DNA from: Vitrella brassicaformis CCMP3155 | Lineage: Eukaryota; Protista; Chromerida | Assembly (NCBI GenBank): GCA_001179505.1 | Contig: CDMY01000566.1 | Span: 1 to 51,193, forward strand | Direction of reading: 5' to 3' | DNA length: 51,193 bases | Shown: positions 13,265-19,421 of the stretch, piece by piece | Layout: each line of letters opens with the position of its first letter | Position numbering within the stretch: the stretch's first letter is position 1 | The notes under the pieces: model-generated | What the model was told of the DNA's origin: nothing | Seen by the model: the letters and a program-made list of their open reading frames with translations, nothing else | The model's database searches: none | Program-made: the position numbers and the translations under genes

Positions 13265-15835
13265 TCAGTTGAGGTTGGCTCGGTTTGGTGCGGCGACGTG
13301 CGCCGCTCCTCCGTCGTTAGGCGACACCATCGAAGGGCTGGATGTCATCTACATATTCACACACACACAGATGCATCCATCCATCCATCCCATCAGCACA
13401 CACACAGATGCTGTTGGTCATTCACTGGTAGGGCGAATGGTACTGGCGATGAGGCGGGTGAGGGGTCGCGTGGCAGAGCCAGCCCGATGTTCATCAGGGG
13501 AGGGCTCCGGTCGCCACGAGGAGACCCCAGATGACCCAACCTGTCATTCACATACATACAAGGACTTTGCCTACATCTCTCTCTCTCTCTTTGTCCCTCT
13601 GTGTGTATGGCGAGGTTGACCTCCCCGGCGTCTTGCAGCCTCGTTTCTTGGCTGAAGACATGGGTACACGAGTAGGCAAACCTATCCTGCAACACACACA
13701 CACACACACACAAGTGAGCCACGCCCAAGTGAATGGGCGGCCATCCAAGGAAAGAGTGTCTCGCATACTTGGCCGATCGAGGACCGATGGGCCGCGGGGC
13801 CGTCACCGCTGCCGTTGCCCCCACACCTCTGTAGGTAACGCACGAGACAGATAAGATAACCGCACAGTGTCCCCCTCCCTCCTCTGTTTGATTACGTGTT
13901 GGGCGAGAATGGTTCGCTGAGGTCCTTGAGGTCGACCATGGACATGCCGCGGCCGCCCACGGTCAGCAGCCCACGGGTCGTGTACGCGGGGGCCGGCGGA
14001 GGCGTCACGGGAACATGCCCCAACGGACTGATAAAGAATGATGTACACACACAGAGGGAGAGGGAGAGAGGGGTCCGCCGTGTCTGTGCTCCGCTTACAT
14101 GTTGGTGTTCGTGCCAGTCGTCTGCTCTACGCCCGCCCTCTCCCCTCCCTCCCCCCCCTCCCCGCCCTGCTCATACTCCTTCTCACGAATGCGGCTCCGC
14201 TGCTCTCCTTCCGACACCACGGGCGGCACCGGCGACGCAGCGACCGACGGACCAAGACTAGGCAGGTCCAGCGGCACCTCCACACGCCCAGCTTGGGCTA
14301 TGCTCGCCAGGATGGGCCACGACTCGCCAACACCTCTACCCCCAGGCCCCTCTCCCCCACCATTGCCATTTTTCTCGTCAAACCCACTGCTACCGTCGGC
14401 CAGGGCCACCTGCACCTGTGGTGTGGCGTCTCGTGAGAGCCCCAGGATGGCGTTCTTTTCGAGGTATTGAGCCATCTGCAGGGCCGGACCGAATGTGGGC
14501 GATCGGAGGCGGCTGGAGGGGAGGTCGTTGATGCCGCCGTTGCTGTTGTTGAAGAATGGGTTGGTGCGCTTGAATGAGTGGATGGGTGGCGGGGTGCGGT
14601 CGGGGACGGGCACTGGGAGAGGGGGCTTGGAGCTATCGCGCGGCTGCTGCTGCTGCTGCTGCTGAGTGGTCATGCTGAGCAGCTGGGTCAACCTGAGAAA
14701 GAGAAATGAGAGACACAGTAACAGCACAAGAGAGTTCGTGTCGTTTGTGTCCTTCATCTATCTGTCTTACTGTTCTTTGATTAGTGACTGTTCCTTGAGG
14801 ACCATGTCGACCTTGGCCCTCACGCCCTCCATCTTCCCCTCCACCCCCGCCAGCCCCCGCTCAACCGCACCCACACTCCCCAAGTTGACCTCCACATCAC
14901 GCAACCGCCCCATCACCCCACCCCCTCCCACCCCGGCTCCCACGCTATCGCCGAACTTGTCATCCAGGGTGCACTCCACCACCTGCTGCATCAGAGCCCT
15001 CAGCTCCTCCTCACGCACGCCGCGCACCATCCTCTCCAAAAGTCCATCGGTGTCGATGGCCTTGGACTCCCGCGCCGCCCCATCACCGTCACCAGCGCCA
15101 GCACCGCCAGCACCGCCATCCGGTGTGCTGTAGATCTCGCCCTTGGGCGAATGCACAACTTGCGACGCACTGCAGCATCCATCCATGGGGAGAGAAAAAA
15201 TGAGTGCCCCCCAGGTCGACATATGCCCTCCGCTCTGTCTGTCGTGTCAATTGCTTACTTGTCCTTTTTCGGCGTGTGGAGCGTGTGTTGGTCTTCCGTC
15301 GCCTGGACGACGGTGTGCTGGTGCTGGTGCTGCTGCTGCTGGTGCAGATGGTGCTGATGGTGGGGGGCAGCTGGGTGGCGGCGCGCGCCGAGATGGGCCG
15401 CATCACCCGCACCCGATGCGATGGAGGCAGATGCAGTGCCGGCCGCCGATCCCGCCGATGCAGCTGTGCGGGGTCGGTGCTGGTGCTGATGCTGACAATA
15501 GGAGAGAAAACGATAATAGCGTTGTGCATTCGGATGCATTCGGATGACGTCACGTTGTATGGCCCATGCACTACCTGTGGTGCGCGCGCGGCGGCCTGTT
15601 TCGGCTTGGGGATCATCGAGGGCTGCTGCACGGGGGGATGCGGGTGCTGCTGCTTCCTGCAGGCAACAATGGCAAAGAGAATTGAGATGCATCCAATGCA
15701 TTCCATCCGTCCAATTCATCCATTCGATGGGTTGTGCACCATCATCCGTACTTCTCCTTACTCCTTGTCCTGTTTCCATTGCAACAGCTTCTTCTTCCTA
15801 TCCACGGCGGCAGCGGATCTTTCCTTGTCCGCCAT
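13265..15835 (-). CDS. Multi-exon low-complexity hypothetical protein with a central coiled coil; 3' exons uncertain
   Basis: Splices as MADKERSAAAVDRKKKLLQWKQDKE / KQQHPHPPVQQ... / HQHQHRP...TPKKD / ASQVVHSPK...LLERMVRGVREEELRALMQQVVE...VEGKMEGVRAKVDMVLKEQ / LTQLLSMTTQQQ... with consistent intron phases. Confidence 0.65.
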
Positions 15836-16007
15836 CTCGCCAAACAACCGCATCCAAGCGGATGCTATCCGCCGGGTAGCGTGAAACGCTTCAGGTGAGG
15901 CGGGCTGTTGGAGTTTGTGGAGTTTGGCCACATACGCTCAGTCCACCGCGTACGACAGGGTGTCAGGACGACGTTGACGAATCAATCCATGGGAGGATGT
16001 CAATACG
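15836..16007. promoter_or_regulatory. Probable bidirectional promoter (172 bp) between divergent ATGs
   Basis: Head-to-head start codons at 15835 (-) and 16008 (+), with microsatellite-free sequence between. Inferred from geometry only. Confidence 0.45.
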
Positions 16008-16350
16008 ATGAAGAGCAGGGTGAAGTTTGCTGATGTGTTCCTGGTGCTGATGGTTGGCGTCGGCACGAGCTACTACACCATGTGGCCTACCATGCAGACC
16101 TGGAAACGGTAAGCTTGAGGCAGCATCCACCCTAATTAATGCATCCTCCCCTGGATCACACGTACTGGCTTGTGTGTGTCTGTGCTGTGTCCTGATGCTG
16201 CCCGTTCCGACGCGTGTTTCAATTCTGTGCAGCAACAACGAGGCCTTGATGGAGGAGCGTGAGCGTCGTCGCGTGTTCATGATGCCTGAACCACCAGCCA
16301 TCACAACCGCCGCCACACCCCCCGCACAGCCTGCTGAAGGCGAGGCCTAG
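16008..16350 (+). CDS. 72-aa single-TM microprotein, PIGBOS1-like; exons 16008-16108 and 16233-16350
   Basis: MKSRVKFADVFLVLMVGVGTSYYTMWPTMQTWKRNNEALMEERERRRVFMMPEPPAITTAATPPAQPAEGEA*. Clean GTAAG...TGCAG phase-2 intron, and a hydrophobic helix followed by a charged helix. Confidence 0.7.
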
Positions 16351-16385
16351 ACGAGAGAGAGAGAGCCATACATAGCGTTGCTATC

Positions 16386-18853
16386 ATGTCGGCTGTGAGG
16401 CGTGTTGTGGGCAATGGGGCGTGTATGCGACCTTCTTTCGTGGCACACGAGTCGGTGACCGAGGGGACGCTTAAGCAGCACATGGACACGCTCAAGACCC
16501 ACCTGCGAAAGATCAATAGGGAGAGCCTCACGCGAGAGCAGTGGATGCAGTAAGCATGCCTCACCAGAGCCTGCAACACAATACAATCTAACGCGCCATG
16601 TCATCACTTGTGTGTGGGCAGGCTGCAGGAAGGTGTGCCGGCTGTCTATCTGTCGCTGCTGCATTACGTGGTGTTTGAGTGGTCGCCATACGTGCCGGCC
16701 TACCTGCTCGACCAGGGCTATGCCTTCAGGGCCGCGGCGGACCGCAAGTTCATCGACAACATATACAAACTTCTCGTAAGCAAGCCATCTCCCCCCACAC
16801 ACCACACCCTACGCCCATATATCCACTCGTCAGCGAGCGTCTTTCTCTTCGGTCTGTCTGCAGCGAGAGGAGTTCCGTTATGAGCCCGATTTGCCCCTGT
16901 CCCTGTTCTTCAACACTGGGGCGCCCCTGAAGAAGCTCCAGCTGCTGTGCCGCACCATCCAGCACATCATGGCCAAGCACCACGAGCTGCACAAGGCCTC
17001 ACACGCCCGCCACACACACCACCACCACCGCCGCCCGAGGCCGCCAGCCCTCGGACATACGCCGTCGTCGGCTCCCTCGACGAGCAGCAACGCATCCAGG
17101 CGGGCAACGACGCCCACCCCGGCAGCATCGTGTGGTGGTGGTGGTGGAAGTGGTCGAGTGGGCAGGAAGGGGGGCTCGGTGACCCCGGTGCAGAGGCGGG
17201 GAGGGGTGAAAGCGGGAAATGGGGACGACAGTGTCAGGTGAGGACATATGTTATGAATGCCGTGACGGGTGCGATTGATATGTGGTCTGTGTTGTGTGTA
17301 CATATGTCTGTCTGGGTGTTGGTTGGTTGTATGTGTCAGGGTGGTGAGGGGCAAACCGGTCGCTGCCGGGTGGGAAGGAGGGCGCATCACGACACCAGGT
17401 GAGTGAGTCCGGTCCGCAAGAGAGAGGCACACCTACCACATGCTATGCACAGCAGAGGCCACATGCCATGCAATACCTGTCTGTCTGTGTGCTTGTCAGA
17501 AGTGCTGCCTCCCACCCTCCCCCTTTCCCGCCCCGCTCCATCCGTGCTGCCCAATCGCCATACCCACGCCCATACCCACACCCAGGGCACACAGTGCTCA
17601 TCTCCCGCGCGAGCTCAAGCACACGTGGACGCCTCTCACCCACCGTCGCCAGCGCGGGCCTGTTTGCCATCCAGCGAGCTCGAGGCCCTGTTCTTTGAAA
17701 TGAAAGAGGTACCTCCACCCCAGGCTGCACGGAAATGGACGCAAACACCGTGGCATTTATTTCGTGTGTGGCTGCAGCGCGCGTGTGAGATGGCGGTGTT
17801 GAAGCCCCGCGTAGATGCGCTGGAGCAGCACGTGACGGTCAGGATGGCTGAGATGGAGAGGCGGCATGAGGGCCGGGTGGTCTCACTCGAACACACCGTC
17901 GCCACCCTTGCAGAGAGGGTGGAGCAGCTGGAGGGCGAGCTGAGGCAGCAGCGCCGAGATGGGGATAGGTCGGGGGCAACAGAGGAGGGGGAGAGGAGTG
18001 GGGGGCGTATGGATGAGATGAGTGACATTCGGGACGTGGTCTCCCGGCAGGTCGATAAGGTGAGAGGCTGGCTGACCCGCACGACGATTTGCTGACTTGA
18101 CACGACGGTTGCCTGGTATATGTTGGCTGGTTCAGGTGGCCATGGAGTATCGTCTGGTAGAGCAGCGGCTCAACATCCTAGACCAAAAGGTGAGTAAGGT
18201 GCTGGTCAACACCACACCAAAACACAAAACTCACCCACTGCTCCTGAATCAGGTGATGTCCCTTGGCAACACCGCCTCGATGCCTCCAGCCCACACCCAC
18301 ACCCCACAACACAGCCACACGAGCGGGCTCCAGGCCAACAGCCCTCTGCAGCCCTCAAGAGGGCACAGCGACACCCGCTTCGCCGCTGCCCCCCGGGCTA
18401 CGGTGCACCATCGGTCACCGACAGAGCCGCGGCTCCTGCCTGTGGGGACGGCAGACAGGGAGGGGTACGAGGGCCAAGACGAGGGCCCACGAATGGCACA
18501 AGTGAGCGAGCACCACCACACTCAGGGCTGCACATCTGGTGGATCGATGGTGTGCTTCCCCTGGTGTGTGGCAGCCGTATGTGGACGTGTATCGTCCGGT
18601 GAGCTGGCAAGCGTCGCCCCCGTACCCTCAGCAGCAGCGTTTTGTGGGCGGCGGCCATGGCCTTGCTTCGCCGCCGTCGAGTGGCGAGAGACCCATGCCG
18701 CTGCTAGCCACCAGATTGAGGCAGTCGTCCCCTCCACAGGACGCTCGGCCACAGGACACGCAGTGTTCTAACTACCAGCCGACCGATCCATGGATGGCCC
18801 ATGGCCCGCCGTATGTTCCCTGTCAGCCGCAGCAGCAGCAGCAGCAGCAGTGA
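16386..18853 (+). CDS. CEP44: Centrosomal protein CEP44 homologue (N-terminal CEP44 domain, coiled coil, low-complexity tail); about 9 exons
   Basis: TLKQHMDTLKTHLRKIN...LQEGVPAVYLSLLHYVVFEWSPYVPAYLLDQGYAFRAAADRKFIDNIYKLLREEFRYEPDLPLSLFFNTGAPLKKLQLLCRTIQHIMAKHHEL follows the CEP44 domain pattern (G.Pa..L.i..y....ySp.v......D.rFid.vYkllRd.F.ykP.L....F...fae.K). Confidence 0.85.
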
Positions 18854-19421
18854 ATAGGGAGGGGAGGGACGGGGGTCGATTGGGCAAACACTTTGAGAAG
18901 GATATGTGGGCTGGTTGGACATGGATGAACGACGAATGTTGACTGAATACATACAATGCATGTACGAGGGCGATTGATTCAGAGAGAGGTGTGACTCACT
19001 CGACACACATAAAGGCCACCATTCGTTCCAAGTGACACGCATATTTCCTTCAGCAGCAGCGCAGCAACATCACACGAAGATTCTCTGAGGAGAGGACATG
19101 TTTGGCTCACTCGCGCCGAGCCCACGCCAGTCATGGGAACAGGATCTGCCGAGGAGGGCACCTGGGGATGGGTCGCACAAGGCAACGTGACATCAGATGA
19201 CTCAGACAGCCTGCTGATGAGTCAAAAGTCAGCAGGCTGTCAAGTCAACATGGACACAATGGGGATCGAACCCATGGCCTTCTCGATGCGAACGAGATGT
19301 GATACCACTACACCATACGCCCAGTTACCAACCTATGGTAGTGCTCTTATCACTGACTACGTCTGCTTCCCGCTCTTCAGTCATCTCGCACCAGCTGCTC
19401 CTTCCAGAAACGCAGCCATTC

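What the first reader, a model, noticed from the sequence alone, without database searches (positions are those of the whole stretch)
16008..16560. Microprotein stop codon is only 35 nt from the CEP44 start: candidate bicistronic or spliced-uORF transcript
Seen: TAG at 16348-16350 and CEP44 ATG at 16386. The next in-frame ATG (16425) is still under 80 nt away, and the CEP44 domain starts right after it, so the start cannot move further down. The spacer is ACGAGAGAGAGAGAGCCATACATAGCGTTGCTATC, too short for a 3' UTR, poly(A) site and separate promoter. Inference: both ORFs share one mRNA driven from the 15836-16007 promoter, coupling a mitochondrial-type microprotein to a centriole protein. Otherwise the CEP44 promoter must lie inside the microprotein gene.
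Basis: partly seen in the sequence, partly recalled or inferred. Interest (0 to 1): 0.7.

Follow-up and report, generated by a model that had tools for sequence, protein, structure and literature searches.

The report
Microprotein and CEP44 share one transcript
In the alga Vitrella brassicaformis, a 72-residue membrane microprotein gene ends 35 bases before the start of the centriole gene CEP44, and spliced RNA assemblies from four libraries run through both. The pair is therefore most likely a two-protein messenger RNA of the kind already known from green algae and Cryptosporidium, although this has not been proven on single RNA molecules.

Summary
The stop TAG is at 16348-16350, the spacer is 35 nt, the CEP44 ATG is at 16386 and the next in-frame ATG is at 16425. 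The CEP44 domain starts about 14 codons after that second ATG.

The organism is Vitrella brassicaformis. Both ORFs are already annotated as separate genes: a 72-aa unnamed protein, and a 594-aa CEP44 called from the second ATG.

Spliced RNA-derived contigs from four libraries in three studies cover microprotein exon 2, the spacer and CEP44 exon 1 as one uninterrupted piece. Their 5' ends lie at 15902-15931, upstream of the microprotein ATG. No contig holds CEP44 without the microprotein ORF. Contigs can merge overlapping transcripts, so an internal CEP44 start site or a hidden poly(A) site is not excluded.

Ten AUGs precede the CEP44 AUG. This argues against the leaky scanning shown in green algae. 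Reinitiation, or a minor internal transcript, is more likely.

The pairing was absent upstream of CEP44 in seven distant homologue loci, and no close relative could be found.

The scan has noted other candidate two-ORF loci in this same genome. I confirmed the 7-nt TFB5 spacing.

Verdict: a new member of a known kind, of moderate interest.

The parts
15761..15869 (-). First exon of the divergent upstream gene. Its ATG is at 15835 on the minus strand, and its 5' UTR reaches at least about 15869.
   Evidence: CT..AC joints at 15655/15761, 15491/15575 and 15169/15259. The depth arithmetic for X2 places the contig end near 15869. The sequence of L001:1-700 reads as this gene.
15902..16007 (+). 5' leader of the two-ORF transcript. 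It contains two tiny uORF AUGs, at 15989 and 15997.
   Evidence: Contig 5' ends lie at 15902 (X1/L003), 15907 (X2/L004) and 15931 (X8/L002).
16008..16108 (+). Microprotein exon 1, with the ATG at 16008. It encodes the N-terminal single hydrophobic helix and is PIGBOS1-like.
   Evidence: Pfam PF23670 gives E 2e-4 on the exon alone and 7e-5 on the whole protein.
16109..16232 (+). Microprotein intron, 124 nt, GT..AG. It is removed in all four RNA libraries.
   Evidence: Joint 16107/16232 (cut +1) in X1, X2, X6 and X8. The bin depths leave no room for an intron-retaining contig.
16233..16350 (+). Microprotein exon 2, ending in TAG at 16348-16350.
16351..16385 (+). Inter-ORF spacer of 35 nt. It starts with a (GA)6-type tract, contains no ATG and has no stable structure.
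   Evidence: The fold z-score is +1.70, and 196 of 200 shuffles fold at least as well. There is no Rfam match.
16386..16549 (+). CEP44 exon 1. The first ATG is at 16386; the annotated start is the second ATG at 16425.
16622..17237 (+). CEP44 exons 2 (16622-16775) and 3 (16864-17237), which carry the CEP44 domain. The intron between them is 16776-16863.
   Evidence: Pfam PF15007 on the separate exons and on P0002. Joints and phase check.
17340..18853 (+). CEP44 exons 4-9: 17340-17398, 17500-17708, 17778-18059, 18136-18189, 18253-18501 and 18575-18853. The stop is TGA at 18851-18853. The ORF has 607 codons counted from 16386.
   Evidence: All joints are GT..AG. Phases are consistent and there are no in-frame stops. 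The same ORF is continuous on RNA contig L002:332-2155.
18854..19237 (+). 3' UTR, at least 384 nt.
   Evidence: X8/L002 contig runs to 19237.

Best explanation
One spliced, polyadenylated nuclear transcript starts near 15900 at a tight bidirectional promoter and carries two separate ORFs.

ORF 1 (72 codons, two exons) encodes a single-helix, PIGBOS1-like, mitochondrial-type microprotein. It is translated by ordinary cap-dependent scanning.

ORF 2 (607 codons, or 594 from the second AUG; nine exons) encodes CEP44. It is reached by only a small fraction of ribosomes. The most likely route is resumed scanning and reinitiation after termination at TAG 16348, giving the low output that a centriole protein needs.

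What is shown: the gene models, the 35-nt spacing, and the co-linearity of both spliced ORFs in RNA assemblies from four libraries.

What is inferred: that single molecules carry both ORFs (about 0.75), and that CEP44 is translated from them by reinitiation (about 0.4).
For: (1) In four runs from three studies, one contig piece, 16232-16549, covers microprotein exon 2, the spacer and CEP44 exon 1. The same contigs have the microprotein intron and the CEP44 introns removed.

(2) The contigs themselves were fetched and read. L002 (2539 nt) has a 77-nt leader, ORF 1 at 78-296, a 35-nt spacer, ORF 2 at 332-2155 and a 384-nt 3' UTR. L001, L003 and L004 agree over 900 compared bases with no mismatch.

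(3) The 5' ends cluster at 15902, 15907 and 15931. No contig starts or ends, and no loose end was listed, between 16109 and 16550. Bin depths are fully explained by the spliced contigs.

(4) The only two contigs on record with the complete CEP44 ORF also hold the microprotein ORF.

(5) The libraries of the genome paper were polyA+ selected (PMC4501334).

(6) ORF 1 looks like a real coding sequence. Its GC3 is 0.74 against 0.75 for CEP44 and about 0.5 for the UTRs and spacer. Pfam PIGBOS1 gives E 7e-5. The three nearest ESM Atlas clusters are PIGBOS1-like, each sharing 182-185 features.

(7) Every upstream AUG opens a frame that ends at or before TAG 16348, and the first AUG after that stop is CEP44's. 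The spacer is unstructured. This geometry allows reinitiation.

(8) There is precedent. Microprotein-first bicistrons (TOM22, OST4, REX1S/TFB5) are known in green algae (PMC7896298, PMC11291117), and polycistrons are known in the apicomplexan Cryptosporidium.

(9) In Vitrella itself, the TFB5 stop lies 7 nt before the next ATG.
Against: Contigs cannot show single molecules, transcript ends, strand or local abundance. Overlapping transcripts would assemble in the same way, as contig L001 shows by fusing with the divergent minus-strand gene.

Vitrella is gene-dense, with a median of 92 bp between genes, so transcription units that start or end inside a neighbouring gene are plausible.

Ten AUGs precede the CEP44 AUG, several with A at -3. 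That is 3.0 per 100 nt against 1.65 in the CEP44 coding sequence.

From established knowledge of yeast and mammalian translation, reinitiation after a 72-codon ORF with only 35 nt to re-acquire initiator tRNA is inefficient.

Also from general knowledge, a stop codon upstream of eight exon junctions would mark the mRNA for junction-dependent nonsense-mediated decay, if Vitrella has that pathway.

No conservation test was possible, because no close relative was found.
Confidence: 0.5

Rival explanations
1. There are two overlapping but separate transcription units, or a mixture as in Cryptosporidium. The microprotein mRNA would be polyadenylated somewhere inside the CEP44 gene. CEP44 protein would be made from a shorter mRNA whose start site lies in microprotein exon 2 (16233-16385), driven by elements in the microprotein intron or exon 1. 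Read-through two-ORF molecules may exist but would not be the template for CEP44.
For: Short-read contigs merge overlapping transcripts; L001 merges even with the divergent gene. The genome is compact, with a median of 92 bp between genes. In Cryptosporidium, most polycistronic transcripts coexist with internal monocistronic ones. The ten upstream AUGs make the long mRNA a poor template for CEP44. Three of the window's seven ATGCATCC motifs cluster at 15532, 15687 and 16139, the last inside the microprotein intron; 1 of 100 shuffles reaches 7 matches, so this is weak.
Against: No contig contains intron sequence 16109-16232, so any internal start site is confined to the 153 nt of exon 2. No contig begins there in any of the four libraries. 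No CEP44-only contig is on record. No loose end or A-run appears near the spacer. The microprotein would need a 3' UTR lying entirely inside CEP44 coding exons.
Confidence: 0.3
2. It is a true bicistronic mRNA translated by leaky scanning, as in green algae. Some 40S subunits would skip the ORF 1 AUG and all later AUGs and initiate at 16386.
For: This mechanism has been shown experimentally for algal bicistrons with small membrane-protein first ORFs (PMC11291117 and PMC7896298). The inter-ORF distance here is short.
Against: Ten AUGs would have to be bypassed, five of them with A at -3, and there is no AUG depletion. In the algal system, a single added AUG cut ORF 2 output to half or to background.
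Confidence: 0.1
3. The upstream ORF is only a spliced regulatory uORF in the CEP44 leader. Its peptide would have no function of its own, and the PIGBOS1 resemblance would be a chance property of a short hydrophobic peptide.
For: The Pfam score of 23.3 bits is below the 27-bit cut-off. The word search found no relative. Atlas scores under 0.9 are leads only. The leader holds further tiny uORFs.
Against: GC3 in the ORF 1 frame equals that of CEP44. The three nearest Atlas clusters are all PIGBOS1-like, sharing 182-185 features, and the further neighbours are other small mitochondrial single-helix proteins. The Pfam alignment covers model positions 1-39 from the first residue. A 72-codon, intron-containing ORF is unusual for a purely regulatory uORF.
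Confidence: 0.1

Closest known systems
Nuclear bicistronic mRNAs of green algae (Chlamydomonas, Chromochloris, Auxenochlorella; PMC7896298, PMC11291117)
   Same: A small first ORF, often a tiny membrane or complex subunit such as TOM22, OST4 or TFB5/REX1S, sits a short distance upstream of a larger unrelated ORF on one capped, polyadenylated transcript. The two products have no evident functional link.
   Different: [quoted passage not shown] Here there are only short-read assemblies. Algal first ORFs are AUG-poor with weak start contexts and use leaky scanning. This leader has ten AUGs, and A at -3 of the ORF 1 start. The lineage is also different (Alveolata, chromerid).
Polycistronic transcripts of Cryptosporidium parvum (bioRxiv 10.1101/2025.01.17.633476)
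   Same: It is a relative of Vitrella with a compact genome. Two to four annotated genes lie on one long transcript.
   Different: In Cryptosporidium, most polycistrons coexist with internal monocistronic transcripts, and the genes are intron-poor and not typically microproteins. Whether internal transcripts exist at this locus is unknown.
Upstream ORFs (uORFs) with reinitiation, GCN4/ATF4 type
   Same: An upstream ORF ends shortly before the main AUG. No upstream frame overlaps the main start, so ribosomes can resume scanning.
   Different: Classical reinitiation-permissive uORFs are a few codons long and their peptides are not conserved proteins. This one has 72 codons, is spliced, and resembles a protein family.
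Human PIGBOS1 locus
   Same: It encodes a single-helix microprotein of the same Pfam family (PF23670), expressed from a locus entangled with another gene.
   Different: By its name (my own knowledge), human PIGBOS1 lies on the strand opposite to PIGB, not upstream of CEP44 on a shared mRNA. I found no paper linking PIGBOS1 and CEP44 functionally.

Membership tests
Green-alga-type bicistronic mRNA | Two non-overlapping same-strand ORFs separated by a short inter-ORF region | tested here: met
   The spacer is 35 nt and the ORFs are in different frames.
Green-alga-type bicistronic mRNA | Both ORFs on the same RNA molecule, with one start site and one poly(A) tail | tested here: inconclusive
   Spliced contigs from four libraries in three studies span both ORFs, with 5' ends at 15902-15931. 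Contigs cannot prove single molecules, and no long reads were available.
Green-alga-type bicistronic mRNA | Weak start context at ORF 1 and few or no AUGs upstream of ORF 2 (leaky scanning) | tested here: not met
   Ten AUGs lie upstream of 16386. The ORF 1 AUG has A at -3. AUG density is 3.0 per 100 nt against 1.65 in the CEP44 coding sequence.
Green-alga-type bicistronic mRNA | Both proteins detected | not testable with these tools
   No proteomic or ribosome-profiling data were reachable.
PIGBOS1-like microproteins (Pfam PF23670) | Score at or above the Pfam gathering cut-off (27 bits) | tested here: not met
   23.3 bits, E 7e-5, over model positions 1-39 of 54. The three nearest ESM Atlas clusters are PIGBOS1-like at 0.87-0.89, which is a lead only.
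PIGBOS1-like microproteins (Pfam PF23670) | Roughly 50-70 residues, with a single hydrophobic helix near the N-terminus followed by a charged tail | tested here: met
   P0001 has 72 aa. A hydrophobic stretch at about residues 8-24 is followed by an E/R-rich segment.
PIGBOS1-like microproteins (Pfam PF23670) | Mitochondrial outer-membrane location | not testable with these tools
   Needs tagging or fractionation.
CEP44 (Pfam PF15007) | N-terminal CEP44 domain scoring above the cut-off | tested here: met
   80.7 bits against a cut-off of 27, over residues 16-139 of P0002. There are 458 relatives at E<=0.001. The domain sits at the N-terminus, as in 20 homologues.
CEP44 (Pfam PF15007) | Centriole or centrosome location and function | not testable with these tools
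   Inferred from the family only.
Regulatory uORF | The peptide sequence is unconstrained; only the act of translating it matters | tested here: inconclusive
   Family resemblance and coding-like GC3 argue for a real protein. No orthologue was found with which to measure selection.

The most novel reading that the evidence does not exclude
Vitrella, and perhaps chromerids or myzozoans more widely, routinely expresses microproteins (PIGBOS1-like, TFB5, OST4-like and others) as the first ORF of two-ORF mRNAs. It would reach the second ORF by an efficient reinitiation-type mechanism that tolerates long, AUG-rich first ORFs and a stop codon upstream of many exon junctions. That would be mechanistically distinct from green-algal leaky scanning and would imply convergent or ancient use of 'microprotein-first' polycistrons across eukaryotes.
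Probability: 0.2. Interest if true: 0.7.

Novelty: new member of a known kind. Interest (0 to 1): 0.45.

Why it matters
Nuclear two-protein mRNAs were long thought to be nearly absent from eukaryotes. They are now documented in green algae, red algae, some fungi and Cryptosporidium.

A case in a chromerid alga, the free-living sister group of apicomplexan parasites, would extend the phenomenon. The first ORF is again a tiny membrane protein, which fits the idea that very short coding sequences ride on larger mRNAs.

This locus also poses a concrete mechanistic question, because its AUG-rich first ORF does not fit the leaky-scanning rule.

For annotation, two points follow. The public CEP44 model starts at the second ATG. 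The two genes should probably share one transcript model.

Tried and rejected
**Word searches for relatives.** Searches with the microprotein and with the CEP44 domain returned only Vitrella's own proteins.

**Whole-library HMMER search.** The search with the CEP44 domain gave 458 relatives, but the best are only 37% identical and come from scattered eukaryotes. No close relative, such as Chromera, was available for a synteny or selection test.

**Distant CEP44 loci.** Seven were read: L008 (Pelomyxa), L009, L010, L011/L012, L013 and L014/L015. None has a PIGBOS1-like ORF upstream, either by ORF listing or by tblastn with P0001.

**Metagenome scans.** The scan with the single domain found nothing.

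**RNA elements and structure.** There is no Rfam family in 15500-17000 and no stable structure around the spacer. An IRES-like element is therefore rejected as unsupported.

**Read-through or fusion.** This is rejected. The two ORFs are in different frames, and no joint links the microprotein exons to CEP44 exons while skipping the stop.

**Other negatives.** The bacterial-type promoter and terminator scan is irrelevant here and found nothing useful. The (GA)n tract of the spacer is a common microsatellite, present at 8 places in the window, so no function is claimed for it. TGCATGCA is not enriched. A Pfam Ost4 search of the genome found nothing, so the scan's OST4 candidate could not be checked. 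A search for the run accessions in papers found nothing.
Full report
**What is in the sequence**

The window is a whole 51-kb contig (C566) of the 72.7-Mb assembly of Vitrella brassicaformis CCMP3155. The organism is named by the database records of both proteins. It agrees with an earlier scan note.

On the + strand, an ATG at 16008 opens a two-exon ORF: exon 1 at 16008-16108, a GT..AG intron at 16109-16232, and exon 2 at 16233-16350. It ends in TAG at 16348-16350.

Thirty-five bases later, with no ATG in between, an ATG at 16386 opens a nine-exon ORF of 607 codons. That ORF ends at TGA 18851-18853. All of its introns are GT..AG, the phases are consistent and there is no internal stop. The next in-frame ATG is at 16425.

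**What the two ORFs encode**

The upstream ORF equals an annotated 72-aa 'unnamed protein product' (P0001).
- It matches Pfam PIGBOS1 (PF23670) over model positions 1-39 at E 7e-5 and 23.3 bits, below the 27-bit cut-off.
- Its three nearest ESM Atlas clusters are PIGBOS1-like. The further neighbours are other small single-helix mitochondrial proteins.
- Its GC3 of 0.74 equals that of CEP44 (0.75), while the UTRs and spacer sit near 0.5.
- I file it as PIGBOS1-like but not as a proven member.

The downstream ORF is a clear CEP44 (PF15007, 80.7 bits).
- The public model (P0002, 594 aa) starts at the second ATG, 16425.
- In 20 homologues the protein starts 2-4 residues before the domain. Only 16386 or 16425 are therefore credible starts.

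Both genes are single copy.

**RNA evidence**

The three studies appear to be a culture-collection transcriptome project (two samples), the genome study, and a 2013 run. All four contig sets are RNA-derived, because their introns are removed at GT..AG.

- In every run, one contig piece, 16232-16549, covers microprotein exon 2, the stop, the spacer and CEP44 exon 1 without a break. The same contig has the microprotein intron and the CEP44 introns spliced out.
- The 5' ends lie at 15902, 15907 and 15931.
- In the deepest library the contig runs on into the divergent minus-strand gene.
- The bin depths are fully accounted for by these contigs. No intron-retaining contig and no additional contig lies in 15870-16660.
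- No loose end was listed near the spacer.

I then obtained the contigs as sequences through the exact-protein look-up: L001 (2904 nt), L002 (2539 nt), L003 and L004.
- L002 reads as a 77-nt leader, ORF 1, a 35-nt spacer, ORF 2 and a 384-nt 3' UTR.
- The four agree base for base over 900 nt.
- The only contigs on record with the complete CEP44 ORF are L001 and L002, and both hold ORF 1.
- The genome paper states that its RNA was polyA+ selected (PMC4501334).

**Limits of that evidence**

A contig is not a molecule. L001 shows this by fusing head-to-head transcripts. Start sites, poly(A) sites and local abundance are invisible in contigs.

Vitrella is gene-dense, with a median of 92 bp between genes including UTRs. 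In Cryptosporidium, polycistronic transcripts usually coexist with internal monocistronic ones.

What the data do constrain is this. No contig contains microprotein intron sequence, so an internal CEP44 start site could lie only within the 153 nt of exon 2. A separate microprotein mRNA would also have to end inside CEP44 coding sequence.

I rate co-transcription on single molecules at about 0.75.

**How CEP44 could be translated**

Counted exon by exon, ten AUGs precede 16386 in the leader that starts at 15902.
- Two tiny uORFs start at 15989 and 15997.
- The ORF 1 start is at 16008.
- One short out-of-frame ORF starts at 16033.
- Six in-frame Met codons follow.
- Five of the ten have A at -3.
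- The density is 3.0 per 100 nt, against 1.65 in the CEP44 coding sequence.

In green algae, ORF 2 is reached by leaky scanning. First ORFs there are AUG-poor, and one added AUG halves or abolishes ORF 2 output (PMC11291117, PMC7896298). That defining feature is not met here.

On the other hand, every upstream frame closes at or before TAG 16348, and the first AUG after it is CEP44's. 16425 offers a second in-frame chance. The 91 nt around the spacer are less structured than shuffles (z +1.70), and no Rfam element is present.

This geometry fits termination followed by reinitiation. By established knowledge from yeast and mammals, though, reinitiation after 72 codons with only 35 nt of spacing is inefficient. 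It would give only a trickle of CEP44, which may suffice for a centriole component. Alternatively, a minor internal transcript supplies CEP44.

One further puzzle comes from general knowledge. The ORF 1 stop lies upstream of eight exon junctions, which would trigger junction-dependent mRNA decay where that pathway exists. Even so, the contig depths are similar to those of the neighbouring genes.

**Conservation**

Word searches found no relatives of either protein outside Vitrella.

The exhaustive profile search with the CEP44 domain found 458 relatives. The best are 37% identical and belong to Pelomyxa, heteroloboseans, a choanoflagellate, Picozoa and a lycophyte, so no close relative is at hand.

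I read seven distinct homologue loci, and none has a PIGBOS1-like ORF upstream. A metagenome scan found nothing.

The pairing is therefore not ancient. Whether it is conserved among chromerids could not be tested. I found no paper that links PIGBOS1 with CEP44 functionally, and none that reports nuclear two-ORF mRNAs in chromerids.

**Context in the same genome**

Earlier notes of this scan list other candidates in Vitrella. I treat them as leads only.
- TFB5 ends 7 nt before a large orphan ORF. A follow-up reported spliced RNA assemblies spanning both.
- OST4 lies upstream of FAM32A.
- A small gene ends 25 nt before POLE2.

I located TFB5 on contig C226 and confirmed that its stop lies 7 nt before the next ATG, and that its ORF also contains internal AUGs. 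A Pfam Ost4 search found nothing.

TFB5/REX1S, OST4 and TOM22 are first ORFs of green-algal bicistrons. The present locus therefore looks like one of a class.

Exons were searched separately by reference. Full-length proteins were taken from database records (P0001, P0002) or from a public RNA contig by reference (L002:332-2152). The phase and AUG checks were done exon by exon.

One representative in alignment A1 looks like vertebrate CEP44, and I did not look up or fetch any contig for it.

**Verdict**

The shared-mRNA reading is supported by RNA assemblies but not yet proven on single molecules. The mechanism of CEP44 translation is open, with leaky scanning disfavoured.

This is a new member of a known kind of system, of moderate interest. 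It would be worth settling with long reads and mapping of 5' ends.

Noticed in passing
window 14955-15869 (- strand): A divergent neighbour gene has its ATG at 15835 on the minus strand. Its CT..AC introns are at 15656-15760, 15492-15574 and 15170-15258. The product is Q/H-rich and low in complexity, with only a weak TFIIA-like Pfam hit (E 0.006). Its 5' UTR reaches about 15869, which leaves roughly 30-40 nt before the + strand RNA begins. In the deepest library the two transcripts assemble into one contig (L001), so their 5' ends may overlap.
   Followed up: partly
window 15989-16052: The leader holds a chain of overlapping stop/start signals. uORF 15997-16011 ends in a TGA that overlaps the microprotein ATG (ATGA). 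uORF 15989-16033 ends in a TGA that shares its A with an ATG at 16033. That short ORF in turn ends in a TGA sharing its A with the in-frame Met codon at 16050. This may be chance.
   Followed up: no
window 16425: The public CEP44 model (594 aa) starts at the second in-frame ATG. The RNA contigs contain the upstream ATG at 16386, which would give 607 aa. A prokaryote-style caller picked a GTG seven codons further in (600 aa).
   Followed up: partly
window 15532, 15687, 16139: Three of the window's seven ATGCATCC motifs cluster around the bidirectional promoter and inside the microprotein intron. The window total is 7 against 2.7 expected, and 1 of 100 shuffles reaches 7. This is a possible promoter-proximal motif but weak.
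   Followed up: partly
window 14068-14070, 18285-18320, 18946: In all four RNA runs, some contigs leave the reference at 14070 and 18320 and enter it at 18946. A 20-nt-sided joint links 14068 to 18285 in two runs. This could be an alternative isoform, a repeat-driven chimera or another transcript. It is unexplained.
   Followed up: no
L014:2163-3304 and L015: In an unidentified, very compact eukaryote from metagenomes, a 106-aa PDCD5-like gene (PF01984) ends 17 nt before the CEP44 ATG on the same strand. The gene before it ends with no gap at all.
   Followed up: no
L016 (G000:C226:78760-81876), - strand: The Vitrella TFB5 gene has three exons. Its TAG lies 7 nt before the ATG of a long Q-rich ORF. 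The TFB5 ORF also contains internal AUGs.
   Followed up: partly
window 13577, 16353, 22532, 22836, 31705, 34477, 41685: (GA)n or (CT)n microsatellites of 13 nt or more occur at about eight places in the window, where none is expected by chance.
   Followed up: no
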